Virus record (IMG/VR): IMGVR_UViG_3300028920_000022
Location: 1-64,000 of that record
Strand: one strand, 5' to 3'
DNA length: 64,000 nt
The number at the start of each line of letters is the position of its first letter. Position 1 is the first letter of the stretch. The translations under genes were made by a program, and so were the position numbers. A model generated the notes under the pieces. That model was not told where the DNA came from, ran no database searches, and saw only the letters and a program-made list of their open reading frames with translations. Shown piece by piece: positions 1,365 through 48,889 of this stretch.

Positions 1365-1619
1365 TTATCGCCTGAGCATAATAAACCGGGTTAAATCAAC
1401 AAATAACAATCTGGCACAAACGGTTACGCCCAACCAGTATATTATGTTTTGGAAGGAAAAATCAGAACCTATTACGAAAAATACCCACACGAAAGCCGTC
1501 AATGATCCTGTCCATACAGCAGTGGCAACACTATTCATTTCTTTTTGAATAGCAATATTATAGCTGACCGGAAGATTAGAACTTACCGGCGTTCGTTTTT
1601 TGTTTCTAAAGCTGACCAT
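1365..1619 (-). CDS. small membrane protein
   Basis: two hydrophobic segments; start corrected to MVSFRN. Confidence 0.55.
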   Translation of the reverse strand: MVSFRNKKRTPVSSNLPVSYNIAIQKEMNSVATAVWTGSLTAFVWVFFVIGSDFSFQNIIYWLGVTVCARLLFVDLTRFIMLRR

Positions 1620-1831
1620 TATTCTATAATATCCTTGATTATCCACTCATCGTCTGTCATTTTGCAAGGAAAAGCTGAGCTTATCAACTCTTCCCTTTTC
1701 TCCGGATGTTCTTTTATCAACTGCCATATATGCGGATCTCGATGGTTTTTGACTATGAAATTAATAAACATTTCTCTAGTTCTACATTTGATGCAGACAC
1801 CGTTTTCGAATCTATGTATCTTTTTTTGCAC
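1619..1831 (-). CDS. ZnF-IIE family protein
   Basis: H..CIKC..C, ends EWIIKDIIE. Confidence 0.75.
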   Translation of the reverse strand: MQKKIHRFENGVCIKCRTREMFINFIVKNHRDPHIWQLIKEHPEKREELISSAFPCKMTDDEWIIKDIIE

Positions 1832-1835
1832 AGTA

Positions 1836-2120
1836 TTATTCGATAATATTCCAAATTATCATCTCGGCGCAAGTTTCCTCGCCGGTTAATTCTCTGTGAG
1901 GTAATGCTGGATTAGGATACACCACTACTAATTTGTTTTTTTCGTTTTTTCTAGCCATTAATCCACACTTGGAACACCGATACATTAGTTGTTCAACCCA
2001 GTTGCGCCCAACACATTCGAAGTCATGGTGTGCTTTGATTTCTGTTTCTTTGAGTATAACAGTGCCATACAAAACGCCTGGGATTGAGTATCCTCCGGGA
2101 AAATTTGGCATACATACCAC
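1836..2120 (-). CDS. ZnF-IIE family protein
   Basis: HHDF..CSKCG..TCAEMIIWNIIE. Confidence 0.75.
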   Translation of the reverse strand: MVCMPNFPGGYSIPGVLYGTVILKETEIKAHHDFECVGRNWVEQLMYRCSKCGLMARKNEKNKLVVVYPNPALPHRELTGEETCAEMIIWNIIE

Positions 2121-2125
2121 CTGTT

Positions 2126-2329
2126 TTACTCAATAATTTCGCGAATTATAATTTCTTCGCAAGTTTCTTTTCCGGTTATATTTTTTGGAGTAATTTCTAT
2201 CTCAATACCAACGAGGAGTGGCATTCGTTTTTGTCCTGGAGTCCACGTTCGTTTAAGATTTTTAATAATATCATCCGTCGGCATCAGTTCGCTACTGTAA
2301 CAACGTTTAAGATTTCTAAGTTTAGTCAT
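2126..2329 (-). CDS. IIE-tail protein
   Basis: ends TCEEIIIREIIE. Confidence 0.7.
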   Translation of the reverse strand: MTKLRNLKRCYSSELMPTDDIIKNLKRTWTPGQKRMPLLVGIEIEITPKNITGKETCEEIIIREIIE

Positions 2330-2573
2330 TCCACCTTTTTATCACCAGCTGATATTCGTCTAAACCCTCACAACATACTGCAATAAGTTTTCCTTCGTTT
2401 TTTTCGCAAATTATGTGTTTATGTCCTTTGCACATGTGTTCGCATTGATCTTGACGTATACGGTAATGTCTTTCTGACCTACCAATATCAGAACACGCAG
2501 CGAATAAAAGCAATATTACAACTGATATTGTAACAAATAATATCATCCATGTGCTAACATCTCCTTTTTCCAT
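2322..2573 (-). CDS. Cys-rich membrane-anchored/lipoprotein-like protein
   Basis: N-terminal hydrophobic helix, LFAAC, several Cys. Confidence 0.6.
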   Translation of the reverse strand: MEKGDVSTWMILFVTISVVILLLFAACSDIGRSERHYRIRQDQCEHMCKGHKHIICEKNEGKLIAVCCEGLDEYQLVIKRWND

Positions 2574-2580
2574 GACATCC

Positions 2581-3501
2581 TCACAGTGACAGCATAGCTG
2601 CGGCTTCTTCTACATTAATTCTGTTAGCAGCCAAATCTGACAATACATGTCTTAATGTACGAACTTGCCATCCGTCGTAAACAATCCCATCGTAATACAA
2701 AACCTGTTTCGAAAACTGAACCGGATTGATAGGCTGTTTTCTAAACGGGGTCTGTAACCCACACATTTGTCGGAAATTAACCGGCACGTCATCAATTACC
2801 GTGTCATGATTGCATCCGTCAATAAAAGGATCTTGCGTTAACCCATGTTTGTTTTCGTAAATGTCGCACAAATCTACAAATTTTTCCCCGTCAAATTTAA
2901 GTTCCGCAAACCTAACATTTGTGGCGCCCAAGTTTTTAGCAAAATTAATATATTTGGCTATTTCTTTTTCTGAGTCTATTGCGTTTTTGATTAGATTACA
3001 ATTCAACCTAATTCTTCCACCAATATTACGAATTTTCTGGATAGATTCTTTTAGTTCGATTTCTTTTAGATTAACCCCTACAATATTACGATTTTTATTC
3101 AAATCATAATGGTGGATAGATATATTTACACCAGCTATTTGATCAAGAAAATCAACCGTTCTTTTCAATAAAGATCCGTTAGTAGTAATCCAAACAGAGC
3201 GGTTTGCCTCATTTAACATTCGAATTAGGGGTTCTAAATCTTTATATAAGGTAGGTTCTCCGCCTAAAAGGATTATGTTTTGTTTTCCGGTATTAATTGC
3301 TGCTTGTCCAATTTCCCGCCAGGTAGCTTTATGATCTGGGTGCCATCCACGTTTTTCTACACACCAGCTACATTTACCATTGCATTCGGGTAATAGGTTA
3401 ACTTCCAACCAATCTTGGAAATTACCTCCGCAAAAATTGGATGGATGAGGATATGTTTTAGTAGACGCATCCACGTGGTTGTTCTTGCACATTGATGACA
3501 C
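2581..3501 (-). CDS. radical SAM protein
   Basis: CNGKCSWC (CxxxCxxC), GGEP, TTNG; start uncertain. Confidence 0.9.
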   Translation of the reverse strand: MSSMCKNNHVDASTKTYPHPSNFCGGNFQDWLEVNLLPECNGKCSWCVEKRGWHPDHKATWREIGQAAINTGKQNIILLGGEPTLYKDLEPLIRMLNEANRSVWITTNGSLLKRTVDFLDQIAGVNISIHHYDLNKNRNIVGVNLKEIELKESIQKIRNIGGRIRLNCNLIKNAIDSEKEIAKYINFAKNLGATNVRFAELKFDGEKFVDLCDIYENKHGLTQDPFIDGCNHDTVIDDVPVNFRQMCGLQTPFRKQPINPVQFSKQVLYYDGIVYDGWQVRTLRHVLSDLAANRINVEEAAAMLSL

Positions 3502-3609: not shown

Positions 3610-3683
3610 TGACTCCAGTGGGACTTGAACCCAACATTTCTAGAGTGAGAGTCTAGTTGCCTATCCTGTTAGCAGATGGAGCC
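3610..3683 (-). tRNA. tRNA-Glu(CTC)
   Basis: GGCTCCA/TGGAGTC acceptor, CTAGA-CTCTCAC-TCTAG anticodon arm, GGTTCAAGTCC T arm; no CCA. Confidence 0.9.
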
Positions 3684-4003
3684 TATTCTATTATCTCTTT
3701 AATATCCCAATCGTTATCTGTATATTGACAAGGTAGAATTCTTTTGATTACTTTTCCCCACTCACCAACTTTGTAAAACGAATATGAAACTCTAAATCTA
3801 TTCAAACCACATTTAATACAATTATTATCATCTCCCCATGTATGTTTGAATTTTTCTGCGTGGCTTCTAGATTCGAATTTACATTCTGGTTCTTCAATTT
3901 TTTCGCTAGACCATTTTGTACATTTTAAACAGATATATTTGCGTCCCGGAATTTGAGAAGTTGTTCTGCACCAATCATGAAAATACATACTACTATTATT
4001 CAA
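3683..4003 (-). CDS. ZnF-IIE family protein (two zinc knuckles)
   Basis: HDW..CLKC, HTW..CIKC, ends WDIKEIIE. Confidence 0.8.
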   Translation of the reverse strand: MNNSSMYFHDWCRTTSQIPGRKYICLKCTKWSSEKIEEPECKFESRSHAEKFKHTWGDDNNCIKCGLNRFRVSYSFYKVGEWGKVIKRILPCQYTDNDWDIKEIIE

Positions 4004-4259
4004 TAATATTCTTGATTATTACTTCTCGACAAGTATCTTCAGAATCATATGGCAAAATATCCTCGGTCCATTCTCCCATTTCGTCATTCCAGCGCTGGTA
4101 CCCAGATGTACCACATTCCGTGCAGTAATACCACCTAATTGTACCTTCCGCCGTATGGTTGTCCGAATCTTCCACAAAATGGTGTGTTTTTGATGCGGCT
4201 AATCTCTTTCGTATTGTTTCCACCAAAAAAATAAAGTCTTTGTTTTCCTTCAGTTTCAT
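3996..4259 (-). CDS. ZnF-IIE family protein
   Basis: HHF..CTECG..TCREVIIKNIIE. Confidence 0.8.
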   Translation of the reverse strand: MKLKENKDFIFLVETIRKRLAASKTHHFVEDSDNHTAEGTIRWYYCTECGTSGYQRWNDEMGEWTEDILPYDSEDTCREVIIKNIIE

Positions 4260-4615
4260 ATAATATCTCGAATGATTAATTCAGAACAAGTATATTTTTC
4301 AGCGAAACCATCTGCTGGCGAAAACTTCCCAGGTTTAGAAACCCTAAGTTTTTCATTATAATCTTTATAAAACATATTTTCGCACTCAGGACATATAATA
4401 ATTAAATCGCTTGATAATATTAAATATGAGAAGTAATCTCTTTTTATTTGGACACGATGCCCTAGCTTTTCTAGTAATTTAATCTCATCCCACAGTTTGT
4501 ATTTTCCATAACCAAATCTTATTATTCTGTATAACGTACAAGAGGAATGAAAGATTAGCTTCCATAAAGGCTTCAAACATAGGGAAAAAAACAATATGAT
4601 TAAAAGTTCAATCAT
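4256..4615 (-). CDS. ZnF-IIE family protein with N-terminal hydrophobic segment
   Basis: LGH..CPEC..TCSELIIRDII; ATGA-coupled start. Confidence 0.75.
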   Translation of the reverse strand: MIELLIILFFSLCLKPLWKLIFHSSCTLYRIIRFGYGKYKLWDEIKLLEKLGHRVQIKRDYFSYLILSSDLIIICPECENMFYKDYNEKLRVSKPGKFSPADGFAEKYTCSELIIRDII

Positions 4616-4878
4616 TCTATTATATCTTTCGTTGCAAACTCTCCACAAGTCATATCTGGATAATCAAACCACATATTGTTTTCCAAATAGTAAATGTTCA
4701 AATAAGTACGAAAATTATTGTACCAAGCAATATCTTTATCCCAGCCGCCGGTTACAGTAAAAATGGTACCACAGTTTTCGCATATCATATCATAATGGTT
4801 TGCCAGTATATGTCTTTTGACCAGTTTGTGTCCTAAATTCTCTAACTTTTCTATGGCGTGGTGAGGATATTTGATCAT
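4612..4878 (-). CDS. ZnF-IIE family protein (CGTIFTxxGGW subfamily)
   Basis: LGH..CENCGTIFTVTGGW..TCGEFATKDIIE. Confidence 0.8.
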   Translation of the reverse strand: MIKYPHHAIEKLENLGHKLVKRHILANHYDMICENCGTIFTVTGGWDKDIAWYNNFRTYLNIYYLENNMWFDYPDMTCGEFATKDIIE

Positions 4879-5171
4879 TTGATTACATCCATAATAATAC
4901 ATTCGTCACAAGTAATATCAGTGTAATATTCCCACATCAAATCACCACCAACCCAATAATGTAAACGTATGAGCAGATCAGATTTTGCGTACCACTCTTG
5001 ATCTCTATACCATCCGCCATTGATAGTAAAGATTGTACCACATTTAGAACAAGTGATTTCCAACACTTTATCTTCTGGTGGCATACAAGCCCTCCAAGGA
5101 AATTCTATTTCAGCCAAAGAATGCCCCAAACGTATTAATTGGTTTTTGAATTTGTTGCGACAATCTTTCAT
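4875..5171 (-). CDS. ZnF-IIE family protein (CGTIFTxxGGW subfamily)
   Basis: LGH..CSKCGTIFTINGGW..TCDECIIMDVIK. Confidence 0.8.
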   Translation of the reverse strand: MKDCRNKFKNQLIRLGHSLAEIEFPWRACMPPEDKVLEITCSKCGTIFTINGGWYRDQEWYAKSDLLIRLHYWVGGDLMWEYYTDITCDECIIMDVIK

Positions 5172-5479
5172 TCAATTATTTCCTTGATAATACATTCTTT
5201 ACAGGTCAAGTTAGGATACTTTCGCCAGTTGGTGAAGCGTCCTACCTTGTTGGTGCTCCAGTAGTATAAAAGCACAGGCTCTCCGATTTTGATATACCAC
5301 GAATTGTCTCTTTCCCATCCGCCAGTAATGGTGAAAATAGTTTTGCAATTATTACATACAAAAACAGCATGGTCTTTATAGATGTCAATACCAACATCCA
5401 TACGTGATTTTTTGATTAGATCGTGCCCCAGATTCTTTAGAATCATTTTGAAATCTTCTGGATATTTTGGCGTGGTCAT
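5168..5479 (-). CDS. ZnF-IIE family protein (CGTIFTxxGGW subfamily)
   Basis: LGH..CNNC..TCKECIIKEIIE. Confidence 0.8.
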   Translation of the reverse strand: MTTPKYPEDFKMILKNLGHDLIKKSRMDVGIDIYKDHAVFVCNNCKTIFTITGGWERDNSWYIKIGEPVLLYYWSTNKVGRFTNWRKYPNLTCKECIIKEIIE

Positions 5480-5499
5480 GTGATTATTTAGAAATTATT

Positions 5500-5772
5500 T
5501 CATTCAATTACGCCCTTAATTATACACTCATCACATGTTTCGTTTTCATAATGAAGCCAATCATCCTTTTTGATATTCCAATAATACATAAAATTACTTT
5601 CGTTGCTGTTGCTGTAAAATGCACCAGGAGTTACAAAAACAGTGGAACACTTTTCGCACACAAAAACAGTGTAATGTAAACCTTTTTTATTGCACAAAAC
5701 TTCGTCAACCAGTTTTTCAACTACTTTGTGTTCAAGGTTTTCTAATATTACTACGAGTTGTGCTTTAGTCAT
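5500..5772 (-). CDS. ZnF-IIE family protein
   Basis: LEH..CEKC..TCDECIIKGVIE. Confidence 0.8.
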   Translation of the reverse strand: MTKAQLVVILENLEHKVVEKLVDEVLCNKKGLHYTVFVCEKCSTVFVTPGAFYSNSNESNFMYYWNIKKDDWLHYENETCDECIIKGVIE

Positions 5773-6050
5773 TGTATAATGTTTCTGATTATAAAGTCTT
5801 TACATGTGTCTTTAGGATAATATTTCCAACCAACCATATTTCCTCCCCAATACAATATATCCTTTACGAACATGTTGTTACCACCCCACTGACCTCCGCT
5901 CGTAGTAAAAATCGTTCCACAATTATTACAAACGAAAAGCGAGTTATCAGGGAACACGTTATCTTTAAACACATCATCCCATGGTTTTTCAACCGGATGA
6001 TGACCAAGGCTTTGTAATGCCTTCACAAATTTTTGTTTTTTGGTGGTCAT
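5769..6050 (-). CDS. ZnF-IIE family protein
   Basis: LGH..CNNCG..TCKDFIIRNIIQ. Confidence 0.8.
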   Translation of the reverse strand: MTTKKQKFVKALQSLGHHPVEKPWDDVFKDNVFPDNSLFVCNNCGTIFTTSGGQWGGNNMFVKDILYWGGNMVGWKYYPKDTCKDFIIRNIIQ

Positions 6051-6319
6051 TTGATGATATTTCTAACAATCGTTTCGTTGCAAGTATATTCATTATCTTT
6101 TTGCCAACCGTTCCATTTTCCGCCCCAATATATAATAGTTATTTCAGATATATCACCTTCAAATGTACCACCCAATATAGTAAAAATTGTGCCGCAACTG
6201 CGGCAAACAAAAACATTAAATCTCATACCTTTAATATCAAGCGCTTTGCTCGCTGGTGTTTCAATAACCTGATGACCACGCAACTTTAATTTTTCTACAA
6301 ATTTTTGCTTTTTAGTCAT
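6047..6319 (-). CDS. ZnF-IIE family protein
   Basis: RGH..CRSCG..TCNETIVRNIIK. Confidence 0.8.
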   Translation of the reverse strand: MTKKQKFVEKLKLRGHQVIETPASKALDIKGMRFNVFVCRSCGTIFTILGGTFEGDISEITIIYWGGKWNGWQKDNEYTCNETIVRNIIK

Positions 6320-6600
6320 TGAATAATGCTTCTAATAATAGTTTCATCGCATGTTAAGTTATTATAATCCTCCCACTTATCTGTAACATAATTAAATATT
6401 TGCCATTCTGCTCTTGGAAGATTACAAAACCAACCACCGTTTACAGTAAAAATAGTTCCACACTTGGTACATATTTTTTCTTTAATTTTCCCTTTCTCAT
6501 CGTAAGATAGGGGTTGCCTCCATGGAAACACAATCCATTTTAGCGTGTGACCTTTGCCACATAAATATTCCAAACATTCGTTGGAGCTTGAGAAATTCAT
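6316..6600 (-). CDS. ZnF-IIE family protein
   Basis: KGH..CTKCG..TCDETIIRSIIQ. Confidence 0.8.
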   Translation of the reverse strand: MNFSSSNECLEYLCGKGHTLKWIVFPWRQPLSYDEKGKIKEKICTKCGTIFTVNGGWFCNLPRAEWQIFNYVTDKWEDYNNLTCDETIIRSIIQ

Positions 6601-6881
6601 TGGATTATATTTCGGATAATCATTTCTTTACAGGTTATCATGGGATATTCTTCCCAAAATCCGGTCCAATAATATATACAGTACGGATATAATCCATAAA
6701 ATTCATCATCTCTATCCCAGCCACCGTTGAGAGTAAAAACAGTGCCACAATTAATGCACTCAAAATTTCGATTGGGCGAATATAACAATGTAACGCTAGG
6801 AAATGACGTTGATGTTCTTACCAAATGATGACCAAGCTTACCCAACTTTTCTTTATATTTTTGTGGGACAGTTGCCAGCAT
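6597..6881 (-). CDS. ZnF-IIE family protein
   Basis: LGH..CINCG..TCKEMIIRNIIQ. Confidence 0.8.
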   Translation of the reverse strand: MLATVPQKYKEKLGKLGHHLVRTSTSFPSVTLLYSPNRNFECINCGTVFTLNGGWDRDDEFYGLYPYCIYYWTGFWEEYPMITCKEMIIRNIIQ

Positions 6882-7138
6882 TACTCTATTACTTCCCGAA
6901 TTATAAACTCATCACATGTTTCGTTTTTATATTCTAACCATTCTGTGTAACTGTGTCGATAATATATTTTGATACCAAAACCGATTGTAGAAAATGCTGC
7001 ACCACAACCATCACATATTGTTATTTTAGAACGCCTTGGGCTAGAATGCAATATTTCCTTCGCGGATTTTTCTATTAAACTATGACCACGTGTTTCTAAT
7101 TGTTTTCGGTATCTTTGAGGTAGTGGTCTTATATTCAT
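6881..7138 (-). CDS. ZnF-IIE family protein
   Basis: RGH..CDGCG..TCDEFIIREVIE. Confidence 0.8.
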   Translation of the reverse strand: MNIRPLPQRYRKQLETRGHSLIEKSAKEILHSSPRRSKITICDGCGAAFSTIGFGIKIYYRHSYTEWLEYKNETCDEFIIREVIE

Positions 7139-7177: not shown

Positions 7178-7615
7178 TTATTCTATAATATTTTGTATAA
7201 TTGCTTCTTTTTCAATTAGAAATATTTTTCTCAAATCTTCTACACTATCAGCAAATCTGGGCCACTCGTCAGTACCGCCTATCTCATATATATATTTTCT
7301 ATCGAAAATACTAATAATTGAAAACACATTAATTGACGTACCTTTGAACTTTTGTTCAGAATCGATAAGCCCAGTATCTGCGAAATATTGGTATTTCGAA
7401 CCAATATATTTCCATGTTTCTAACATTGCTTTGTTTTCCTCGCAATTAAATGTTTCGTATTTTCCACTCCTAAATACTGCTTTGTATATATTTGATACGT
7501 CAACCTCTGGCGAAAGCAACAAATTAACAACTTTAACCAATACACCCTGACAGTACATCCCATCAGTGTCTTCTGGGTCTTTCAAACTATTATGTACTAT
7601 GACGTAATACTTCAT
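7178..7615 (-). CDS. IIE-tail protein without zinc finger
   Basis: ends EAIIQNIIE. Confidence 0.7.
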   Translation of the reverse strand: MKYYVIVHNSLKDPEDTDGMYCQGVLVKVVNLLLSPEVDVSNIYKAVFRSGKYETFNCEENKAMLETWKYIGSKYQYFADTGLIDSEQKFKGTSINVFSIISIFDRKYIYEIGGTDEWPRFADSVEDLRKIFLIEKEAIIQNIIE

Positions 7616-7628
7616 AGTTTACCTTGAG

Positions 7629-42649: not shown

Positions 42650-42891
42650 TCTATTATTTCACGAATGATAAAATCATCACAGCTAATTTCCTTAGCCAAT
42701 CTTCTTTTTTCTCCCCTTTCTGTTATCTTAAACGCTGTCTTGTAACCACAAATAACAGAAATGTATTTTGTATCACCAAAGGCTATTAACCCGCATTCAC
42801 AACACCTATAATATGTAAGACCAGGAGAAAACTCCTCCCGATCTTTTTCTCCGTCTTCTATTTTTCGAAATTTGTGTTCCCGTGTTGTCAT
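42646..42891 (-). CDS. ZnF-IIE family protein
   Basis: EHKF..CCECG..SCDDFIIREIIE. Confidence 0.82.
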   Translation of the reverse strand: MTTREHKFRKIEDGEKDREEFSPGLTYYRCCECGLIAFGDTKYISVICGYKTAFKITERGEKRRLAKEISCDDFIIREIIE

Positions 42892-43100
42892 TCGATTATT
42901 TCCCGTATTATCCAATCATTACAACTGATTTCTGCAGGATATACCAAAGATGAGTCGGAACTGTAGGAAATTAGATAACGATTTTTGTACTGCCATGATT
43001 CGAATACTATTATTCCACAATTGATACACCGAAAATATCTATCGTTATTACGTTTATACGGATCCAATGCCGGTTCAAACTCGTGGGTTCCTATTTTCAT
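42888..43100 (-). CDS. ZnF-IIE family protein
   Basis: MKIGTH..CINCG..SCNDWIIREIIE. Confidence 0.82.
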   Translation of the reverse strand: MKIGTHEFEPALDPYKRNNDRYFRCINCGIIVFESWQYKNRYLISYSSDSSLVYPAEISCNDWIIREIIE

Positions 43101-43318
43101 TCTATTATTTCCCGTATTATCCATTCCTTACAATCAATATCTTCTGGCTTAACATAAGGATGAAATCTCCAATCTATGTGTCCGTCAAATTTGGTTATCC
43201 AAAAATTCTCGTTACGCTCATCAAACCACAAAAACATCCCGCAAATGTCGCACCGGTAGAAGTTTTTTGACAATCCAAAACTTTTTCGCATTGTTATTTC
43301 GTGACTGCCAAGCTTCAT
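43097..43318 (-). CDS. ZnF-IIE family protein
   Basis: MKLGSH..CDICG..DCKEWIIREIIE. Confidence 0.82.
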   Translation of the reverse strand: MKLGSHEITMRKSFGLSKNFYRCDICGMFLWFDERNENFWITKFDGHIDWRFHPYVKPEDIDCKEWIIREIIE

Positions 43319-43530
43319 ACCAAAATCTCATGAATAATGAATTCTTCGCACGTCATGTCTTCAGCAAATTTGCGAGTTCCCGAATTCGTTTTGTAAACGT
43401 TCCCATTCATTAAAGATATCCAATATTCTCCCCGCGAATTACGAAATATTATCATACCACACTTTGTACAACTAAACCTCATACCAATTTCAAATTTGCG
43501 TATTCCAACTATGTGCGTCCCGATTTTCAT
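43315..43530 (-). CDS. ZnF-IIE family protein
   Basis: MKIGTH..CTKCG..TCEEFIIHEILV. Confidence 0.82.
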   Translation of the reverse strand: MKIGTHIVGIRKFEIGMRFSCTKCGMIIFRNSRGEYWISLMNGNVYKTNSGTRKFAEDMTCEEFIIHEILV

Positions 43531-43745
43531 TCGATTATACACCTTATTACGTATTCGTCACATGTTATTTCGGTCCCCAACATCCGCGTGCCATCATCTT
43601 TTATAATATTTTTCATGTCCGAATGCGCCGAAACTGCTAAGTTACCTCTAGTGTACGAATATAAAATTATACCGCACTCTGTACACTGATAATAAACATC
43701 ATCATCCTTCCATGGAATTAACTTGTGCGTCCCTACTCTCTTCAT
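43527..43745 (-). CDS. ZnF-IIE family protein
   Basis: VGTH..CTECG..TCDEYVIRCIIE. Confidence 0.82.
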   Translation of the reverse strand: MKRVGTHKLIPWKDDDVYYQCTECGIILYSYTRGNLAVSAHSDMKNIIKDDGTRMLGTEITCDEYVIRCIIE

Positions 43746-43966
43746 TTGATTATGCTCGCGATTATATACTCTTTACAGGTAATTTCGTGAGCTTCTTTCT
43801 TTATTGGTACACCGTTACAGATTTTAGAATCCAACCCAAAACCACAAAATGCTGAAATATGTAGTGTTTCGGTTGTTCCCGCGTTATACGTTATTAACCC
43901 ACACTCTTCACAAATATAATACCTTTCCATATCCCATTTCCTAAACCTGTGCGTACCGTATTTCAT
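43742..43966 (-). CDS. ZnF-IIE family protein
   Basis: MKYGTH..CEECG..TCKEYIIASIIK. Confidence 0.82.
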   Translation of the reverse strand: MKYGTHRFRKWDMERYYICEECGLITYNAGTTETLHISAFCGFGLDSKICNGVPIKKEAHEITCKEYIIASIIK

Positions 43967-44172
43967 TTAATTATCTCTCGTATTATCCATTCATTACAAC
44001 TGATTTTCTCAACTGGTATCTGCCCTATCCCATTCCCATTTCCTAAAGACGTTACAAAACCATTGCTAGTTGTGTATACAAGTAATCCACAGTTTTCACA
44101 TACAAAATAATCGTCCGGATAGCCAATCTCAAACTTGTCTTCTTTAGTTATTGGTCTGAATTCGTGAGCCAT
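43963..44172 (-). CDS. ZnF-IIE family protein
   Basis: AHEF..CENCG..SCNEWIIREIIK. Confidence 0.82.
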   Translation of the reverse strand: MAHEFRPITKEDKFEIGYPDDYFVCENCGLLVYTTSNGFVTSLGNGNGIGQIPVEKISCNEWIIREIIK

Positions 44173-44385
44173 CTATTCTATTATCTCCCGGATTATCCAT
44201 TCCTCACAATTTATGCTATCTGCACGCATATAATGATGCAGCTTATTCGTTGCACAAATGTAATACTCCCTCATTCTCGTTGACCAACAAACCATGCCAC
44301 AATGTATGCATCTGTAATATTTGACGTATATTTCATCACTGGGTTTTTCAAAAATGCGCTCCAAATTATGCGTGCCACAAATCAC
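44173..44385 (-). CDS. ZnF-IIE family protein
   Basis: CGTH..CIHCG..NCEEWIIREIIE. Confidence 0.82.
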   Translation of the reverse strand: MICGTHNLERIFEKPSDEIYVKYYRCIHCGMVCWSTRMREYYICATNKLHHYMRADSINCEEWIIREIIE

Positions 44386-44627
44386 TCAATTATCCCCCTT
44401 ATTATTACTTCTCTGCAGTTTAGATCAGCCGCCTTCCTCCTTAAACCCCCATTATGTGTGAAACTCTCTCCACCGTTTATGTTGGATATCCAAAACTCTC
44501 CGTCCTTCGAATAAACCACTAAATCGCAATCCTCACATACCCAGTAGTCTAACAATTGTGGAGCTTGTGTTCGTATATTCATCGCTTCGTTGTCAGATTC
44601 GCTTAGCTTTATTAACCTGTGACTCAT
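44382..44627 (-). CDS. ZnF-IIE family protein
   Basis: SHRL..CEDC..NCREVIIRGIIE. Confidence 0.82.
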   Translation of the reverse strand: MSHRLIKLSESDNEAMNIRTQAPQLLDYWVCEDCDLVVYSKDGEFWISNINGGESFTHNGGLRRKAADLNCREVIIRGIIE

Positions 44628-44842
44628 TTGATTACTTCCCTAATTATCCAGTCACTGCATGTCGTTTCTTCAGGAGACCACATAAATTTGTCAGAAATGT
44701 TAGATATTATATATTTACCAGTGTGTATTCCCTTGAATATAACTAAACCACACTCTTTGCATTTATAATATTCCTCCTGGTGCGGCTCTCCGGCACATAA
44801 TGGCTTGCCGGTTGACTCAAATTCATGCGTCCCGATTTTCAT
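44624..44842 (-). CDS. ZnF-IIE family protein
   Basis: MKIGTH..CKECG..TCSDWIIREVIK. Confidence 0.82.
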   Translation of the reverse strand: MKIGTHEFESTGKPLCAGEPHQEEYYKCKECGLVIFKGIHTGKYIISNISDKFMWSPEETTCSDWIIREVIK

Positions 44843-45081
44843 TCGATTATTTCTCGTATTATCCACTCATCACAACTGATTTCTTCCGCTTTTCTCCTAC
44901 GAAAATTATCCTCCATAGCTACCGCCCCACACCGACTCGAAATGTACTTCGTAGAAGACCTGCCTCTGAAGCGAAATGCTAACATTCCACACGCTTTACA
45001 CTCATAATATTCGTTTTCCTCAGGAAAATTGGCTCTAGCGAACTTTCCTTCGTGTCTTATTTTTTCGAATTTGTGTGACAC
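44839..45081 (-). CDS. ZnF-IIE family protein
   Basis: SHKF..CKACG..SCDEWIIREIIE. Confidence 0.82.
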   Translation of the reverse strand: MSHKFEKIRHEGKFARANFPEENEYYECKACGMLAFRFRGRSSTKYISSRCGAVAMEDNFRRRKAEEISCDEWIIREIIE

Positions 45082-45084
45082 TGT

Positions 45085-45282
45085 CTACTTGATTATCTCC
45101 CTCACTACCCATTCGTTACAACTTATCTCTCCAGGATCAAGTAACGCAGGATCAGACATCGTGGATATTATATGTTTTCCATCACTAGCTTCAAATATTA
45201 CAATTCCACACTCTTTGCATTTATAATATCGATATCGATATCTCCCGTTCATCTTTTCAAACTTGTGCGTTCCAATTTTCAT
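45085..45282 (-). CDS. ZnF-IIE family protein
   Basis: MKIGTH..CKECG..SCNEWVVREIIK. Confidence 0.82.
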   Translation of the reverse strand: MKIGTHKFEKMNGRYRYRYYKCKECGIVIFEASDGKHIISTMSDPALLDPGEISCNEWVVREIIK

Positions 45283-45500
45283 TCGATTATTTCCCTGATT
45301 ATCCGTTCCCGACACCCTATACTCCCTATTAATTCCTGCCTCTCCGAACAGGCTAGCGATGTCCAAAACTCTCCGTCATCATTTTCGAATATTATTATCT
45401 CACATTCCTGGCATATCCAGTACAAAGAAGAAGGTCCAATATTAAACTTTGAACGCTCTTCCTCAGATGTCTTACGAAATGTGTGATCCCCTATCTTCAT
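45279..45500 (-). CDS. ZnF-IIE family protein
   Basis: MKIGDH..CQEC..GCRERIIREIIE. Confidence 0.82.
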   Translation of the reverse strand: MKIGDHTFRKTSEEERSKFNIGPSSLYWICQECEIIIFENDDGEFWTSLACSERQELIGSIGCRERIIREIIE

Positions 45501-45736
45501 TCGATTATCTCCCGGATTATAAACTCATCGCAACTTATTATTTCAGGACTTTTACCCACAAATCTAAGCTCTAATCCGCTCAATAATGATATCCCTACTC
45601 GGTCTCTTTCCCTGTATGCTACTATCCCACATTCTGAACATTGATAATATGTTTTAAATAAATTGTGGATTTTCGGATGCTTTCGGCTTATCTTTTCTAC
45701 CTCTTCTTGGGTTAATTCTTTGAATTTATGCGTCAT
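45497..45736 (-). CDS. ZnF-IIE family protein
   Basis: THKF..CSECG..SCDEFIIREIIE. Confidence 0.82.
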   Translation of the reverse strand: MTHKFKELTQEEVEKISRKHPKIHNLFKTYYQCSECGIVAYRERDRVGISLLSGLELRFVGKSPEIISCDEFIIREIIE

Positions 45737-45966
45737 TTGATTATTTCCTGAATTATAAAATCTCGGCAGCTTATATATTCAGGGTTGTAAATGTTTTGAC
45801 GATGAAATTCTGATATACTACATTTGCCATTGAAATCATAAATTATAATACCACATTCTTCGCATTTGTAGTATTTGGCATCGTGGTTCGGTATGAATCC
45901 ATAATTACGTAACTTTTGTACCTCTCCTTTCCTCATTTCTTTGAATTTGTGCGTCCCTATCTTCAT
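45733..45966 (-). CDS. ZnF-IIE family protein
   Basis: MKIGTH..CEECG..SCRDFIIQEIIK. Confidence 0.82.
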   Translation of the reverse strand: MKIGTHKFKEMRKGEVQKLRNYGFIPNHDAKYYKCEECGIIIYDFNGKCSISEFHRQNIYNPEYISCRDFIIQEIIK

Positions 45967-46205
45967 TCGATTATCTCCCGGATTATTAATTCATTGCAGT
46001 TAATGTCCTCCGCTTTGTACCTGCCACCATCGTGAAAAGCAAATTCGTGATACCCAGATACAACTAATCTCCCAGTATCTGGTTTCTCAAATGCCACCAA
46101 TCCACATTCCTCACATTTGTAATAATCCATTTTCTCCGGTGTAAACCTGTAAGACTGTAAACCATCCCTCTCCTCAATACTTAATTTCCGAAACCTGTGA
46201 TTCAC
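45963..46205 (-). CDS. ZnF-IIE family protein
   Basis: NHRF..CEECG..NCNELIIREIIE. Confidence 0.82.
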   Translation of the reverse strand: MNHRFRKLSIEERDGLQSYRFTPEKMDYYKCEECGLVAFEKPDTGRLVVSGYHEFAFHDGGRYKAEDINCNELIIREIIE

Positions 46206-46405
46206 TTGATTATCCCCATTATTATCACATCCTCACAGCTTATCTCCTCAGGATATGTCGGTAATTCCTGATAATTGTAATTCCTTATCGATATCAACCT
46301 ACTCTTGTTCCAAAATACCCACAATCCACATTCGCTACATTGATAATACCTGTCCTCTTTCGGAAATAATCTGTGAGTCCCAGCTTTCTTCAAAATTGTG
46401 CCCAC
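46202..46405 (-). CDS. ZnF-IIE family protein
   Basis: AGTH..CSECG..SCEDVIIMGIIK. Confidence 0.8.
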   Translation of the reverse strand: MGTILKKAGTHRLFPKEDRYYQCSECGLWVFWNKSRLISIRNYNYQELPTYPEEISCEDVIIMGIIK

Positions 46406-46478
46406 ACCCTTTCTAATCCTTTTCCTAACAGCTTTTCTTTTCTTAACCCGCCCCTTGCCCTAAATATATAAAACGCCT

Positions 46479-46718
46479 TTAAATTAAAATTTCCCTTATT
46501 ATAAAATCGTCGCAACTTATGTCAGACGCTAGGATGGGAAGTGTGTCGCAAACATAGTTCGCCGCTGAAATGTGGTATTCCCCCTCATACAATACTTCGT
46601 ATATTATGAGTCCACAATTCTTACATTGATGATAATTGTTTCCCTTTAAATGTCTGTACCTTTCTCCTAATTCTTCTAAATCCATTCTCCTACATTCATG
46701 CGTTCCAATCTTCTTCAC
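46479..46718 (-). CDS. ZnF-IIE family protein
   Basis: GTG start; IGTH..CKNCG..SCDDFIIREILI. Confidence 0.8.
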   Translation of the reverse strand: MKKIGTHECRRMDLEELGERYRHLKGNNYHQCKNCGLIIYEVLYEGEYHISAANYVCDTLPILASDISCDDFIIREILI

Positions 46719-46918
46719 TTGATTATTTCCCGTATTATCCATTCATTACAACTGATTTGCTCTATCGGTATCTGCCCTATTCCTTTTTGGTTCTCAAGTG
46801 AGGTAAGATATTCTTTCCCGTATTTGAAAAGTATTAATCCGCATTCTTTGCACCTGTAATATTTGTAACAATCATCCCCCGTTGTTATTTCGGTCAAATT
46901 GTGCCCGTTTATCTTCAT
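46715..46918 (-). CDS. ZnF-IIE family protein
   Basis: NGH..CKECG..SCNEWIIREIIK. Confidence 0.82.
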   Translation of the reverse strand: MKINGHNLTEITTGDDCYKYYRCKECGLILFKYGKEYLTSLENQKGIGQIPIEQISCNEWIIREIIK

Positions 46919-47163
46919 TTAATTATCTCCCTTATAATTATCTCCTCACAACTCATATCCTTAACCTCGTACCATCTGATTTCGTTTAATTCGGAAATTC
47001 CCCAATTTTTGCTTTTCTTGCTTTTGTATATTATTATCCCACATTCCTTACACCTGTAATAATACTTGGTTAAATCATGTACACCAAATCCATGCGCTTT
47101 ACATATCTCCACTAACTCTTTGTTCCTTATTAATTTGCACTTTTCGTGTGTCCCTATCCTCAT
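46915..47163 (-). CDS. ZnF-IIE family protein
   Basis: MRIGTH..CKECG..SCEEIIIREIIK. Confidence 0.82.
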   Translation of the reverse strand: MRIGTHEKCKLIRNKELVEICKAHGFGVHDLTKYYYRCKECGIIIYKSKKSKNWGISELNEIRWYEVKDMSCEEIIIREIIK

Positions 47164-47405
47164 TTTATTATTCCCATCACTATCCAATCGTTACATGTTA
47201 TCCCCTCAGGTCTTCTATAAGTAAATTCGTGATTGCCATTTAAATCTGAAATGTAATATTGTAGCACTCCCTCTAATAAAATAATTCCACAAATAGTACA
47301 TTTATAATAACGCTCGCCTTCTGGTACTCCGCTAAATCCTAAACTTTTTGCCAATGCATCTACATCTTGTACTGGCTTTAATTCGTGCGTACCAAGTTTC
47401 TTCAT
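47160..47405 (-). CDS. ZnF-IIE family protein
   Basis: LGTH..CTICG..TCNDWIVMGIIK. Confidence 0.82.
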   Translation of the reverse strand: MKKLGTHELKPVQDVDALAKSLGFSGVPEGERYYKCTICGIILLEGVLQYYISDLNGNHEFTYRRPEGITCNDWIVMGIIK

Positions 47406-47638
47406 TTAATAATCTCCAGGATTATAAACTCATTGCAGCTTATATTCTTCGCAAAATTATACTTTGTTACCCCAGATATCATGAACTCGCCTTCCTTAGT
47501 CTCAAATGCTATCATCCCACATTCTGCGCATCGGTAATATTTGAATGTTCTGTCCATCCATATGTATCCGTTATCCTTTAAATAATCGAACTCTGCCCCG
47601 CTTATCCCCTCCAAATTGTGCGTTCCCACCGCTTTCAC
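47402..47638 (-). CDS. ZnF-IIE family protein
   Basis: VGTH..CAECG..SCNEFIILEIIK. Confidence 0.82.
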   Translation of the reverse strand: MKAVGTHNLEGISGAEFDYLKDNGYIWMDRTFKYYRCAECGMIAFETKEGEFMISGVTKYNFAKNISCNEFIILEIIK

Positions 47639-47859
47639 TCTATTATCTCCCGTATGATTATCTCTTCACAACTTATCTCTTCAGGTCTTTTAGGTAAATC
47701 TCTCCCGTTTAATTCGGAAATAACCATCCTCCCTAATCCGTCACTCTCGTCATATACCAATAATCCGCATTCGCTACACCTGTAATAATAATCCTCAAAT
47801 ACTACTCCGTTATAAAACTCCCTGTCCTCGTCAGTTAATTCCTTGAATCTGTGATTCAT
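47635..47859 (-). CDS. ZnF-IIE family protein
   Basis: NHRF..CSECG..SCEEIIIREIIE. Confidence 0.82.
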   Translation of the reverse strand: MNHRFKELTDEDREFYNGVVFEDYYYRCSECGLLVYDESDGLGRMVISELNGRDLPKRPEEISCEEIIIREIIE

Positions 47860-48122
47860 TCGATTATCTCTCTTATTACTAATTCGTTGTATTTTATTGC
47901 GTATTCATCACAAGTTATTACTTCAGAACTCTTGCCAATAAATACCACACTTAATCCGCTCATCCATGATATTAGAAATTCACCGTATTCTTCGTATACT
48001 ACTAATCCACATTCCTTACATTTATAATAATTTTCCAATATCTCCGGATTACAGAAACCTAAAGCTTGTGTTTGTAATTCCTTTACCTCATCCTCCTCCA
48101 TCTTTTCGAAATTGTGCCTCAT
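47856..48122 (-). CDS. ZnF-IIE family protein
   Basis: RHNF..CKECG..TC..LVIREIIE. Confidence 0.82.
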   Translation of the reverse strand: MRHNFEKMEEDEVKELQTQALGFCNPEILENYYKCKECGLVVYEEYGEFLISWMSGLSVVFIGKSSEVITCDEYAIKYNELVIREIIE

Positions 48123-48319
48123 TCGATTATTCCCCGTATTATCCATTCGTTACAACTTATTAAAGATGGATCTTTTCCAAGATATTCAAGGCTGTTATTA
48201 AAATGGGACATTAACATTTTATCGTCCTCTAAATATAATACCATCCCACATTCTTCGCATTTGTAATGGTATTGTGATAATTCAGCGATTTTCTTCATCC
48301 TGTGCGTCCCTATCTTCAT
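48119..48319 (-). CDS. ZnF-IIE family protein
   Basis: MKIGTH..CEECG..SCNEWIIRGIIE. Confidence 0.82.
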   Translation of the reverse strand: MKIGTHRMKKIAELSQYHYKCEECGMVLYLEDDKMLMSHFNNSLEYLGKDPSLISCNEWIIRGIIE

Positions 48320-48348
48320 CGGAAAAACCTACATCCCGTTTTATATAT

Positions 48349-48573
48349 TTACACTATTATCTCACCTATGATAAAATCATCGCAACTTATCTTCAAAGGA
48401 TTTTGTGGGTATGAACCGTTGATACGCGAAACTACAAACTCTTCGCTAAGATAGTATAAAATTATCCCACATGTGCTGCATTTGTAATATGTCCAATTTG
48501 TTTTGGGACATTGTGGGTGGTATGGATCTTTTATTTCTATTAATTCGTGCGTCCCTACCTCGATTACTTGCAT
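48349..48573 (-). CDS. ZnF-IIE family protein (first gene of array)
   Basis: VGTH..CSTCG..SCDDFIIGEIIV. Confidence 0.8.
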   Translation of the reverse strand: MQVIEVGTHELIEIKDPYHPQCPKTNWTYYKCSTCGIILYYLSEEFVVSRINGSYPQNPLKISCDDFIIGEIIV

Positions 48574-48889
48574 ATTCAACCCCGTTCTCGAATTTTAAAA
48601 GCTTGAAACGTAGTTTCTTTTTTATTTTTTCTTATCGTAATCCAATATTTTAAAACATTTTTGGGCATCTAAGTGCTCGAAATTAAAGGACTTTTTCACT
48701 TGGCTATGAGAGCTTATCACAGTTTGTAGGAAAAAACAAGGGGTTTTGTGAAGGGGGATTATTATAAGTTTGTAGAGAGATTGGTTTTAAATAATTGTAC
48801 AGGGTTTTTGCTTCGGTTATTCCCCAAGGTTTCAGGTTTCCCCAGTTTCTACGGCTTCTTCAGCTCTGGTTTCTACGGTTTACTCCAGT

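What the first reader, a model, noticed from the sequence alone, without database searches (positions are those of the whole stretch)
1619..48579. About 100-member paralog repertoire: zinc-clasped hypervariable mini-proteins sharing a C-terminal 'IIREIIE' tail
Seen: roughly 105 ORFs (hand count) end in C-x-[DE]-x-[IV]-I-[RK]-[ED]-[IV]-I-[EKT]-stop. Most are 65-105 aa with an N-terminal His (GTH/LGH/HKF), a central CxxC and one Cys just before the tail, i.e. four potential Zn ligands. Everything between these anchors is highly divergent. About 60 lie head-to-tail from 34.0 to 48.6 kb, with further blocks at 3.7-7.1 and 27.5-33.3 kb, and local subfamilies (CGTIFTxxGGW at 4.6-6.9 kb, MKIGTH at 39-48 kb). 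Inference: a constant scaffold, variable loops and a constant docking helix is the logic of a binder or adaptor library (compare F-box/SOCS-box adaptors in poxviruses and giant viruses). It could be a phage anti-defence or host-takeover repertoire that routes many targets to one partner (protease, capsid or phage compartment). I know of no named family matching it.
Basis: partly seen in the sequence, partly recalled or inferred. Interest (0 to 1): 0.95.

Follow-up and report, generated by a model that had tools for sequence, protein, structure and literature searches.

The report
Huge-phage zinc mini-proteins sharing one tail
A 459-kb uncultivated phage carries about 100 very different small zinc-binding proteins that all end in the same short isoleucine-rich helix; the same ending also sits on unrelated proteins in related phages, so it looks like a shared protein tag of unknown purpose.

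Summary
About 96-104 minus-strand ORFs between 1.6 and 48.6 kb end in Φ-I-I-[KR]-[DE]-I-I-[EK]-stop. All 54 matches to the core hexapeptide in the six-frame translation lie within one residue of a stop codon. Most of these ORFs (77 of 96) have His + CxxC + a late Cys. AlphaFold2 gives a confident small β-sheet plus C-terminal helix, and the tail is that helix. No Pfam, PHROG, PDB or GenBank-phage relative was found. An exhaustive HMM search finds 553 cluster representatives, and pattern scans find arrays in other huge-phage contigs but none in bacterial genomes. Paralogs are old (none above 59% identity) and syntenic orthologs exist.

First, 77 of 93 tails overlap the next gene's start (ATGA), and positions -5/-4 encode its Shine-Dalgarno sequence, so part of the conservation is at RNA level. 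Second, the four Ile positions are under protein-level selection. The same tail also ends unrelated proteins (DUF4116 repeats, a deoxyribosyltransferase-like protein and others), so it is modular.

Best reading: a clade-specific C-terminal tag that links many diversified accessory proteins to one partner. The partner and function are untested.

The parts
34017..48579 (-). Main head-to-tail array: 59 tail-bearing genes, mostly 65-98 aa, of the His/CxxC/Cys zinc mini-protein type. Most are joined by ATGA stop/start overlaps.
   Evidence: gene list and counts; alignment A1; overlaps.
27487..33280 (-). Second block: 14 pattern-positive members plus degenerate-tail copies (30574-30798, 31112-31324, 32347-32820). 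It includes larger tail-bearing proteins of 155-158 aa.
   Evidence: Orthologs of 28872-29339 and 32347-32820 in related contigs keep the tail at about 33% identity.
3683..7138 (-). Third block: 12 members, including the CGTIFTxxGGW subfamily (4875-6881).
   Evidence: Syntenic orthologs occur in L016 at 30-63% identity.
1619..2329 (-). Three members at the window's low end (1619-1831, 1836-2120, 2126-2329).
   Evidence: Orthologs in L016 at 47-48% identity.
7178..9751 (-). Four tail-bearing genes interleaved with tRNA genes: 7178-7615 (145 aa, no CxxC), 8241-8474, 8752-8928, 9407-9751. Three of them (7178-7615, 8241-8474, 9407-9751) are followed by a tRNA gene rather than a coupled gene, yet keep the tail.
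16997..19891 (-). Tail-bearing proteins on other scaffolds or with N-terminal extensions: 16997-17341, 17401-17901 (166 aa), 18499-19110 (203 aa), 19107-19379, 19637-19891.
   Evidence: Orthologs in L020 and L009 at 25-32% identity keep the tail.
33291..33725 (+). The only plus-strand member: 144 aa, with a C-terminal GH...CxxCG...LTENEQIIKDIIT. It has no coupled downstream gene and no GGA in its tail codons.
45085..45282 (-). Representative 65-aa member used for the structure model. His6, Cys22, Cys25 and Cys55 are the conserved candidate zinc ligands. Strands are at residues 6-10, 18-22, 28-31 and 37-39, and the helix at 55-64 is the tail.
   Evidence: pLDDT 88.5, pTM 0.74.
45497..45532 (-). 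Typical junction: the last 11 codons and TGA stop of gene 45497-45736. The A of the last codon plus the TGA stop form ATGA (45500-45497), which holds the start codon of gene 45279-45500. The [KR][DE] codons (CGG GAG here) lie 8 nt upstream of that ATG and act as its Shine-Dalgarno sequence.
   Evidence: nucleotide table; codon-bias and coupling tests.
48761..48790 (-). Sigma-70-like promoter match (TTAAAA-18-TATAAT) upstream of the first gene of the array. A second strong match at 46498-46525 precedes the internal gap at 46406-46478.
   Evidence: consensus match only; function not shown.
39425..39683 (-). Probable frameshifted member. The N-terminal part (…NNRMKI…) is in one frame (39471-39683) and a canonical tail (…TTCTDVIIREIIV-stop) ends at 39425 in another frame.

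Best explanation
The region is a multigene family found so far only in huge-phage contigs. It encodes single-domain zinc mini-proteins of about 65-105 aa. The candidate zinc ligands are a His in the first strand, a CxxC knuckle, and a Cys at the N-terminus of the terminal helix.

The family grew by old, mostly local tandem duplication. Its members are kept as distinct lineages that have orthologs in related phages.

The genes are packed into translationally coupled strings. In most cases the stop codon overlaps the next start (ATGA), and the next gene's Shine-Dalgarno sequence is written into tail positions -5/-4.

The tail is an [ST]-x-x-[DE] capping box followed by Φ-I-I-[KR]-[DE]-I-I-[EK]. 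It is a C-terminal helix under protein-level purifying selection, and it is modular: in this phage clade it also ends unrelated proteins.

Inferred mechanism (not shown): the tail is a common handle that connects a large, diversified set of accessory proteins to one shared partner. These proteins are probably expressed early from host-type promoters. The handle could serve delivery, localisation, packaging or timed removal, while the variable loops of each zinc domain provide individual target specificity.
For: Shown:
1. The motif is exclusively C-terminal and massively over-represented (54 of 54 occurrences terminal; about 96 of 144 ORFs in 1-48.7 kb).
2. The scaffold is conserved. CxxC is invariant and His and Cys are at least 90% conserved in A1. 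Of 375 unique tail-bearing sequences, 293 have CxxC plus Cys(-11), and 289 of those also have an upstream His.
3. The AF2 model is confident (pLDDT 88.5) with the tail as a helix at residues 55-64.
4. Selection acts on the protein.
   - With anchors that do not use the Ile positions (n=288), position -6 is I 256/V 30, position -3 is I 249/V 35 and position -2 is I 270/L 12.
   - Other AU-rich codons (Lys, Asn, Phe, Tyr, Leu) are essentially absent there.
   - In 8 syntenic ortholog pairs, the four Ile positions show 18 synonymous changes against 8 identical codons, 2 I/V swaps and 4 other changes.
   - The tail persists on genes followed by a tRNA or an intergenic gap, and on the lone plus-strand gene.
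5. The tail is modular.
   - At least 6 unrelated non-CxxC families (46 ORFs of 80 aa or more) end in the same tail.
   - They include DUF4116-repeat proteins (PF13475, E 5e-23 and 1e-32) and a nucleoside deoxyribosyltransferase-like protein.
   - Orthologs at 25-34% identity keep the tail.
   - In the DUF4116 model the last 7 residues end a long helix with lower confidence (pLDDT 56).
6. The tail is dual-coding.
   - 77 of 93 tails have an ATGA-type overlap.
   - Lys AAG is 15/28 in the tail against 115/507 in gene bodies (p=9e-4).
   - Arg NGG is 22/40 against 88/330 (p=4e-4).
   - SD-like tetramers occur in 47/80 coupled against 3/14 uncoupled tails in the window (p=0.018), and in 88/171 against 9/40 in other contigs (p=0.0013).
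7. The family is old and clade-wide.
   - No paralog pair exceeds 59% identity.
   - The best paralog tends to be nearby: median 11 genes away, against 28.9 when shuffled.
   - There is synteny with L016.
   - The exhaustive HMM search gives 553 cluster representatives, most of the top hits from elsewhere.
   - Arrays occur in a 435-kb contig, a 38-kb contig and dozens of metagenome contigs.
   - No genuine member turned up in 185,579 prokaryotic species genomes.

Inferred: early expression, from sigma-70-like matches upstream of the array and in its gaps.
Against: - No partner was identified and no interaction, expression or phenotype data exist. The host is unknown.
- In the zinc proteins the helix carries a zinc ligand and is modelled as part of the fold. 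Its conservation there could be purely structural.
- Bacterial repeat units related to the core also continue with [ST]-x-x-E-x-V-I, which hints that the first half of the tail is ancestral to the domain.
- I could not obtain model coordinates, so burial or exposure of the Ile side chains is not established.
- Only about 55% of coupled tails contain a clear SD-like tetramer, so the coupling mechanism itself is only partly explained.
- Promoter evidence is consensus matching only.
Confidence: 0.5

Rival explanations
1. Structural-only tail. The C-terminal helix is just the hydrophobic core element and fourth-ligand carrier of a tiny zinc domain. Its sequence is further narrowed by the overlapping translation signals. 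Each protein acts alone through its variable loops (for example as an inhibitor of a host protein), and there is no common partner.
For: - The helix is modelled with pLDDT 80-90 and begins with the conserved Cys.
- The [ST]-C-[DN]-[ED] preceding it is a classical helix capping box (established knowledge).
- Core residues of small zinc fingers are typically about 90% conserved.
- Related bacterial repeats keep [ST]xxExVI after the knuckle.
Against: - The same 6-7 residue ending occurs on at least 6 unrelated, non-zinc families, including DUF4116 repeats, and is kept in their 25-34% identical orthologs.
- In the DUF4116 model the tail is the least confident part of the last helix.
- Near-exclusive Ile (rarely Leu or Met) at four positions across about 290 sequences that are otherwise 20-40% identical is stricter than ordinary core packing.
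Confidence: 0.25
2. Nucleic-acid-level element only. The conserved ending is a translation-initiation or reinitiation cassette (AU-rich, SD, AU-rich, ATGA) for the next gene, and/or a junction homogenised by recombination or gene conversion in the array. On this view the peptide has no function of its own.
For: - 77 of 93 tails in the window and 158 of 211 elsewhere have ATGA-type overlaps.
- There is significant G enrichment at the third base of codon -5, and SD-like tetramers are linked to coupling.
- Positions -6 and -2 show position-specific ATC enrichment.
- The tail DNA also gives repeated promoter-like TTGTAA-18-GATAAT matches.
Against: - Synonymous sites of the Ile codons turn over freely between orthologs.
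- At position -7 the Ile codon usage is no different from gene bodies (p=0.30).
- Other AU-only codons are not used.
- The I-I..I-I-E part persists where there is no downstream coupled gene, and only the SD part relaxes there to Asn or Tyr.
- Gene bodies are saturated (none above 59% identity), so recent homogenisation would have to be confined to about 20 nt.
- A transcription start from the -10-like hexamer would fall at or after the ATG, downstream of the SD.
Confidence: 0.1
3. RiPP-like precursor peptides. The small Cys-containing ORFs would be substrates of the radical SAM enzyme at 2581-3501, and the constant tail would be a follower or recognition sequence.
For: A radical SAM protein (PF04055, E 1.7e-15) lies among family members. 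Weak NCBIfam similarity to peptide maturases appears among many other radical SAM classes.
Against: - The proteins are predicted to be folded domains with four conserved metal ligands.
- The radical SAM protein matches no maturase model above its cut-off; its best (sub-threshold) NCBIfam matches are MoaA and viperin-type models, and no SPASM-domain match was listed.
- One enzyme for about 100 dispersed substrates on several scaffolds, including DUF4116 repeats, is implausible.
Confidence: 0.03

Closest known systems
Repeat module of large bacterial cell-surface proteins (for example P0011 with 30 copies, P0012, P0029 with BspA-type LRR, P0036). It is not a curated family; Pfam gives only scattered zinc-finger and DUF7128 matches.
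   Same: Both share the core …[YW][YW]-x-C-x-x-C-G-x-x-F…G…I-[ST] with a preceding G-H. hhalign gives probability 94.5% and E 8e-8 over 26 columns. A few phage members also keep the extra Cys between the His and the knuckle (for example 48349-48579).
   Different: - The bacterial units are tandem repeats inside secreted 600-4600-aa proteins.
- They use a Cys upstream of the knuckle rather than one at -11.
- They lack the [KR][DE]IIE ending.
- The profile alignment does not extend to the tail.
Small one-domain zinc-finger µ-proteins of prokaryotes (for example the C(P)XCG proteins of Haloferax volcanii, PMC10716476; Pfam DUF7128/7129/7130)
   Same: Both are proteins under 100 aa built around a zinc knuckle. 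There are weak sub-threshold Pfam similarities (16.5 bits against a 25.7 cut-off).
   Different: - The ligand pattern differs (His/CxxC/Cys against two CPxCG motifs).
- Those proteins have no C-terminal motif.
- They form no 100-copy arrays.
- They are not phage-borne.
Viral multigene families with a shared terminal adaptor motif (poxvirus ankyrin/PRANC F-box-like proteins, giant-virus F-box/BTB expansions).
   Same: The logic is the same: many diversified binding modules each carry one short constant C-terminal element.
   Different: There is no sequence or profile similarity. The tail here is 7-11 aa, not a 40-50-aa box. The host is prokaryotic, with no SCF or cullin machinery. No partner is known.
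Short terminal peptides that route phage or bacterial proteins: N-terminal capsid-targeting sequences of T4 internal proteins, the C-terminal ClpX-tethering peptide of SspB, and C-terminal degrons. Recalled from general knowledge; leads only.
   Same: In each case a short terminal peptide shared by otherwise unrelated proteins gives common handling (packaging, tethering to a protease, turnover).
   Different: The sequences and positions differ, and none was tested here. No such tag shared by about 100 paralogs is known to me in phages.
Translationally coupled operons with ATGA overlaps and a Shine-Dalgarno sequence inside the upstream gene's 3' end (established knowledge)
   Same: The geometry is the same: the stop overlaps the start, and an SD-like GGA lies about 8 nt upstream inside the last codons.
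   Different: Here the arrangement recurs about 80 times in one window, and it coexists with protein-level conservation of the flanking residues.

Membership tests
Zinc ribbon / treble-clef-like zinc finger (structural class) | Four conserved Cys/His ligands, including a CxxC knuckle in a β-hairpin | tested here: met
   CxxC is invariant, and His6 and Cys55 are at least 90% conserved in A1. 289 of 293 CxxC/Cys(-11) sequences have an upstream His. The knuckle lies between strands 18-22 and 28-31 in the model.
Zinc ribbon / treble-clef-like zinc finger (structural class) | Fold similarity to solved zinc-finger structures, and actual metal binding | tested here: inconclusive
   Foldseek against PDB and BFVD gave no match with E <= 0.001. 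The best zinc-finger match was a FLYWCH domain at TM 0.43, probability 0.30.
Pfam DUF7128 and related small zinc-finger DUFs | Score at or above the family's gathering threshold | tested here: not met
   The best score was 16.5 bits against a 25.7 cut-off for one member. Other members scored lower or nothing.
Bacterial surface-protein zinc repeat module | Profile-profile homology over the whole unit | tested here: inconclusive
   hhalign probability 94.5%, E 8e-8, but only over the central 26 columns. The His region and the tail are not in the local alignment.
F-box / SOCS-box / PRANC adaptor proteins | A 40-50-aa box domain detectable by its Pfam profile | tested here: not met
   20 family members were scanned against Pfam at E <= 1 or 0.01, with no F-box, SOCS or PRANC hit. 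The tail is only 7-11 aa.
RiPP precursor peptides with a radical SAM maturase | An unstructured precursor with a leader or follower, plus a cognate maturase (SPASM or RRE domain) matched above threshold | tested here: not met
   Members are modelled as folded zinc domains. The neighbouring radical SAM protein matches maturase models only far below cut-off (45.5 bits against 500 and 23.3 against 340).
PHROGs phage protein families | A match to any PHROG profile | tested here: not met
   0 families for 10 members at E <= 0.01. tblastn against 50,697 GenBank phage records found no match.
Translationally coupled gene string | Stop/start overlap and an SD-like sequence at the correct spacing inside the upstream gene | tested here: met
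   77 of 93 tails have ATGA-type overlaps. There is G enrichment at the codon -5 third base, and SD-like tetramers are associated with coupling. Actual coupling was not measured.

The most novel reading that the evidence does not exclude
A previously unknown address-tag system of huge phages. A 7-11-residue Ile-rich C-terminal helix is written onto more than 100 diversified proteins per genome: zinc mini-binders, DUF4116 repeats, enzyme-like proteins. A single phage or host receptor would read this tag. It would send the whole set to one destination, such as packaging into the capsid for co-injection, a compartment, or a protease for delivery of bound targets or timed clearance. The same codons double as the translation-coupling signal that keeps the set co-expressed.
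Probability: 0.35. Interest if true: 0.9.

Novelty: new variant of a known kind. Interest (0 to 1): 0.8.

Why it matters
Huge phages carry hundreds of genes of unknown function. Here, about 26 kb of one 459-kb genome (about 40% of this 64-kb window) goes to a single unannotated family. That family is absent from curated protein, structure and cultured-phage resources, yet it recurs in many environmental huge-phage contigs.

A strictly C-terminal motif shared by unrelated scaffolds is a concrete, testable handle. Finding what binds it would assign a common pathway to more than 100 proteins at once, and it could reveal how such phages organise host takeover or counter-defence.

The locus is also an unusually clean natural example of dual coding. 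A protein motif and a ribosome-binding site share the same codons, and built-in controls (uncoupled genes) separate the two constraints.

The small, confidently modelled zinc scaffold with hypervariable loops may also be of interest as a natural mini-binder framework.

Tried and rejected
- **Curated libraries.** Pfam, PHROGs and NCBIfam gave nothing for the family.
- **Fold search.** Foldseek against PDB and BFVD found nothing significant.
- **Word-indexed protein search.** It returned only the phage's own proteins. The loci it led to (L001-L003) are 100% identical to the window, so they are the same phage seen in other samples and not relatives.
- **The search for related loci with the alignment.** It failed for lack of a conserved 7-10-column block. 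I replaced it with a back-translated DNA pattern scan.
- **dN/dS between paralogs or with fetched relatives.** Abandoned because everything is at or below 59% amino-acid identity and synonymous sites are saturated. I used codon comparison of syntenic orthologs instead.
- **Tail as a sigma-70 promoter.** TTGTAA-18-GATAAT matches recur. I rejected this as the main role because the predicted transcription start would fall at or after the next ATG, downstream of its SD.
- **Programmed frameshift making polyproteins.** No X XXY YYZ slippery site is present. The 'DNTGNNRM' extensions are just the tail read in the next gene's frame.
- **RiPP precursors.** See the rival explanations.
- **Matches in bacterial genomes.** The two hits are a 13-codon ORF and a non-family ORF, that is, chance.
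- **Literature.** Searches for the motif strings, the sample accessions and huge-phage family expansions found nothing relevant.
- **Chimeric assembly.** I considered whether the abrupt GC change at 48.6-50 kb is an assembly artefact. The same junction is present in the IMG contig pieces L010 and L036, which span it, so it is not specific to the window. Those loci come from the same contig and are not an independent assembly.

Full report
**What the window is.** The window is part of IMGVR_UViG_3300028920_000022 (also Ga0272441_10000008), a 458,729-bp viral contig. Identical DNA is present in an ENA assembly (143.5-kb contig) and in a Logan run assembly. The window has two compartments:
- Positions 1-48.6 kb have about 36% GC and are transcribed almost entirely on the minus strand. 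They contain 8 tRNA genes and an RNA repair/modification cluster.
- Positions 50-64 kb have about 50% GC and carry small plus-strand genes, including RadC.

A first regex pass found the strict reader motif 26 times and a looser one 45 times on the minus strand, against one on the plus strand.
- Calling ORFs with ATG only gave 79 strict and 13 loose tails.
- Allowing GTG/TTG starts gave 97 ORFs, one of them dubious.
- Counts by block are 59, 14, 12, 4, 4 and 3.
- With degenerate, frameshifted and plus-strand copies the total is about 100-104.
- The core hexapeptide occurs 54 times in the six-frame translation, and every occurrence is within one residue of a stop codon.
- About 96 of 144 ORFs of 45 aa or more in 1-48.7 kb carry the tail, covering 25.9 kb.

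**The scaffold.** In an alignment of 46 members (A1) the CxxC is invariant. His6, Cys55 and two tail Ile are at least 90% conserved, while mean column identity is only 21%.
- Across 375 unique tail-bearing sequences from the window, related contigs and the HMM search, 293 have CxxC plus Cys at -11. Of those, 289 also have an upstream His, usually G-H.
- Loop lengths vary widely. His to CxxC spans 6-107 residues (median 19), and CxxC to Cys spans 8-90 (median 33).
- AlphaFold2 on A1 gives pLDDT 88.5 and pTM 0.74. It predicts four short strands and a C-terminal helix at residues 55-64.
- That helix begins at the conserved Cys and is preceded by Ser/Thr. So [ST]-C-[DN]-[ED] reads as a helix capping box (established knowledge), and the tail is a three-turn helix.
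- No coordinates were available, so zinc geometry and side-chain burial are inferred.

**Relatives.** Pfam, PHROGs, PDB and BFVD fold search, and tblastn against 50,697 GenBank phage records all gave nothing significant.
- The exhaustive profile search of 1.84 billion cluster representatives found 553 proteins at E <= 1e-3.
- Of the top 131 small hits, 83 are not from this window. They have the same architecture and the same tail.
- A back-translated tail pattern found further arrays:
  - a 435,004-bp viral contig;
  - a 38-kb contig;
  - 66 loci from about a dozen metagenome projects.
- These non-window loci contain 211 unique tail ORFs in 56 loci. 39 of the 56 loci have two or more, 165 of the ORFs have the zinc pattern, and 158 have an ATGA-type overlap.
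- Representative genomes of 185,579 prokaryotic species gave only two chance matches.
- The only non-phage relatives are long bacterial surface proteins with up to 30 tandem copies of a module that shares the central knuckle region. hhalign gives 94.5% probability and E 8e-8 over 26 columns. They lack the phage ending.

**Evolution.** No two window paralogs exceed 59% identity, and most are 20-40% identical, so the array is old rather than a recent burst.
- The best paralog tends to lie nearby: median 11 genes away, against 28.9 in shuffles with a minimum of 17 in 2000 shuffles. This indicates local tandem duplication.
- A duplicated two-gene unit is visible at 37575-38495.
- A 38-kb contig of a related phage (L016) is syntenic with window 1-7 kb. 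Member-by-member orthologs there are 30-63% identical, so individual members are maintained as separate lineages.

**The tail is partly an RNA signal.** Of 93 tails, 77 end …A-TGA, so that the next gene's start codon overlaps the stop.
- The [KR][DE] codons read (A/C)GG-GA(R/Y) about 8 nt upstream of that ATG.
- Synonymous usage is shifted accordingly:
  - Lys AAG is 15/28 in the tail against 115/507 in gene bodies (p=9e-4).
  - Arg NGG is 22/40 against 88/330 (p=4e-4).
- SD-like tetramers are more frequent in coupled than in uncoupled tails. The figures are 47/80 against 3/14 in the window (p=0.018), and 88/171 against 9/40 in other contigs (p=0.0013).
- In uncoupled genes, position -4 drifts to Asn or Tyr (AAT, TAT).
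- The last residue (E, K or Q) is largely set by the need for NNA before TGA.

**The tail is mainly a protein signal.**
- I anchored only on CxxC, Cys(-11) and D/E(-9), giving 288 ORFs. Position -6 is I 256/V 30, position -3 is I 249/V 35, position -2 is I 270/L 12, and position -7 is I 200/V 29.
- Other AU-only codons (Lys, Asn, Phe, Tyr, Leu) are essentially unused, and ATC is common. AU-richness therefore does not explain the pattern.
- In eight syntenic ortholog pairs, the four positions show 18 synonymous changes, 8 identical codons, 2 I/V exchanges and 4 other changes.
- The I-I..I-I-E part persists on genes followed by tRNAs or gaps, and on the single plus-strand gene 33291-33725.

**The tail is modular.** In the window it ends proteins with no CxxC (7178-7615, 17401-17901, 28142-28618, 32347-32820 and others).
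- Their orthologs in related contigs, at 25-34% identity, keep the tail.
- Across the fetched loci, 46 ORFs of 80 aa or more without CxxC carry it and fall into at least six families.
- One of these is a DUF4116-repeat family (PF13475, E 5e-23 and 1e-32).
- Single cases carry a nucleoside deoxyribosyltransferase-like domain and an L7/L12-like segment.
- The AF2 model of a DUF4116 member (pLDDT 76) puts the tail at the end of an 18-residue terminal helix. Confidence falls to 56 over the last seven residues. This fits a less-packed, exposed end, but the evidence is weak.

**Interpretation.**
- The shown facts fit a clade-specific C-terminal helix motif that has been placed on many accessory proteins. 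Most of these are a hypervariable zinc mini-domain family, and the motif shares its codons with the coupling signal for the next gene.
- What the motif does is inference. I favour a common handle read by one partner, for routing, packaging, tethering to a protease, or timed removal. My reasons are strict terminal position, modularity across folds, and Ile-specific conservation stricter than ordinary core packing.
- The main rival is that it is only a structural helix plus a by-product of overlapping translation signals.
- The RNA-only, recombination-junction and RiPP readings are less likely, for the reasons given under each rival.
- Sigma-70-like matches upstream of the array and before internal gaps suggest transcription by host RNA polymerase, that is, early expression. 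These are consensus matches only.

**Novelty and limits.** I found no named family, no solved or predicted structural neighbour, no cultured-phage homolog and no literature mention.
- The general logic, a multigene family with a shared terminal motif, is known from eukaryotic large DNA viruses and from bacterial effector sets. I therefore rate it a new variant of a known kind rather than categorically new. The address-tag reading is the most novel case that is not excluded.
- The host, expression, metal binding and any partner remain untested.

Noticed in passing
window 48600-50300: GC content jumps abruptly from about 36% to about 50%, and the coding strand switches from minus to plus, so transcription is divergent. 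The two compartments look compositionally like different genomes, yet the junction is contiguous in the IMG contig pieces that span it (L010, L036; same contig, so not an independent check).
   Followed up: partly
window 48895-49039: An iteron-like array of degenerate 15-18-nt units (…TTTCGGTT…; AACCGAAA on the minus strand) lies between the two divergent gene blocks, upstream of the array's promoter-like site. It could be an origin of replication or a regulator-binding array.
   Followed up: partly
window 3609-10034: Eight tRNA genes (Glu, Trp, Leu, Pro, Asn, Phe, Asp, Gln) on the minus strand are interleaved with tail-bearing genes.
   Followed up: partly
window 20329-27557: An RNA repair/modification cluster: an RlmN/Cfr-like radical SAM (weak match), Thg1-type tRNA-His guanylyltransferase (22721-23464), polynucleotide kinase/phosphatase (24537-25460), a Pol-beta-type nucleotidyltransferase (25777-26442) and a SAM methyltransferase (26913-27557). 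None of these carries the tail.
   Followed up: partly
window 2581-3501: A radical SAM protein (its best, sub-threshold matches are MoaA and viperin-type models) is embedded among family members.
   Followed up: partly
window 10590-15653: A plus-strand island with higher GC sits inside the minus-strand region. It includes a 507-aa protein with no family match and an LRR-containing protein (14634-15653). A VWA-like protein lies next to it on the minus strand (15643-16422).
   Followed up: no
window 55722-55899: A 12-nt tandem repeat (15 copies) encodes a Gly-Tyr-Gly/Asp-rich low-complexity stretch in a 78-aa ORF. An exact 34-nt direct repeat lies just upstream (55630-55698).
   Followed up: no
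window 50274-50735: A RadC/JAB-family protein (NCBIfam E 1.7e-32) is the first recognisable gene of the high-GC plus-strand block.
   Followed up: no
proteins P0011, P0012, P0029, P0035, P0036: Large bacterial surface proteins (up to 2220 aa here, and up to 4615 aa in the hit list) hold up to 30 tandem copies of an apparently uncurated His/Cys/CxxC module related to the phage domain's core. Some also carry BspA-type LRRs or Listeria-Bacteroides-type repeats. This may hint at the origin of the phage family or at its host group.
   Followed up: partly
protein P0037 (135 aa): A natural fusion of two family units. The first unit's tail has degenerated (…IIKKHIG) and reads straight into the next unit's start, as expected if a stop codon at an ATGA junction was lost.
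   Followed up: no
window tails, e.g. 43970-43999, 45092-45121, 46722-46751: The Cys codon region plus the E-I-I codons repeatedly form a TTGTAA/TTGTGA-18 nt-GATAAT/AATAAT pattern. This inflates sigma-70-like promoter matches (103 against 77.9±9.1 in shuffles). It is probably a by-product of the coding sequence.
   Followed up: partly
loci L007, L008, L060 (same 458,729-bp contig, outside the window): Further tail-bearing zinc mini-protein genes occur elsewhere in the same genome, some on the other strand. The genome-wide repertoire is therefore larger than the roughly 100 in this window.
   Followed up: partly
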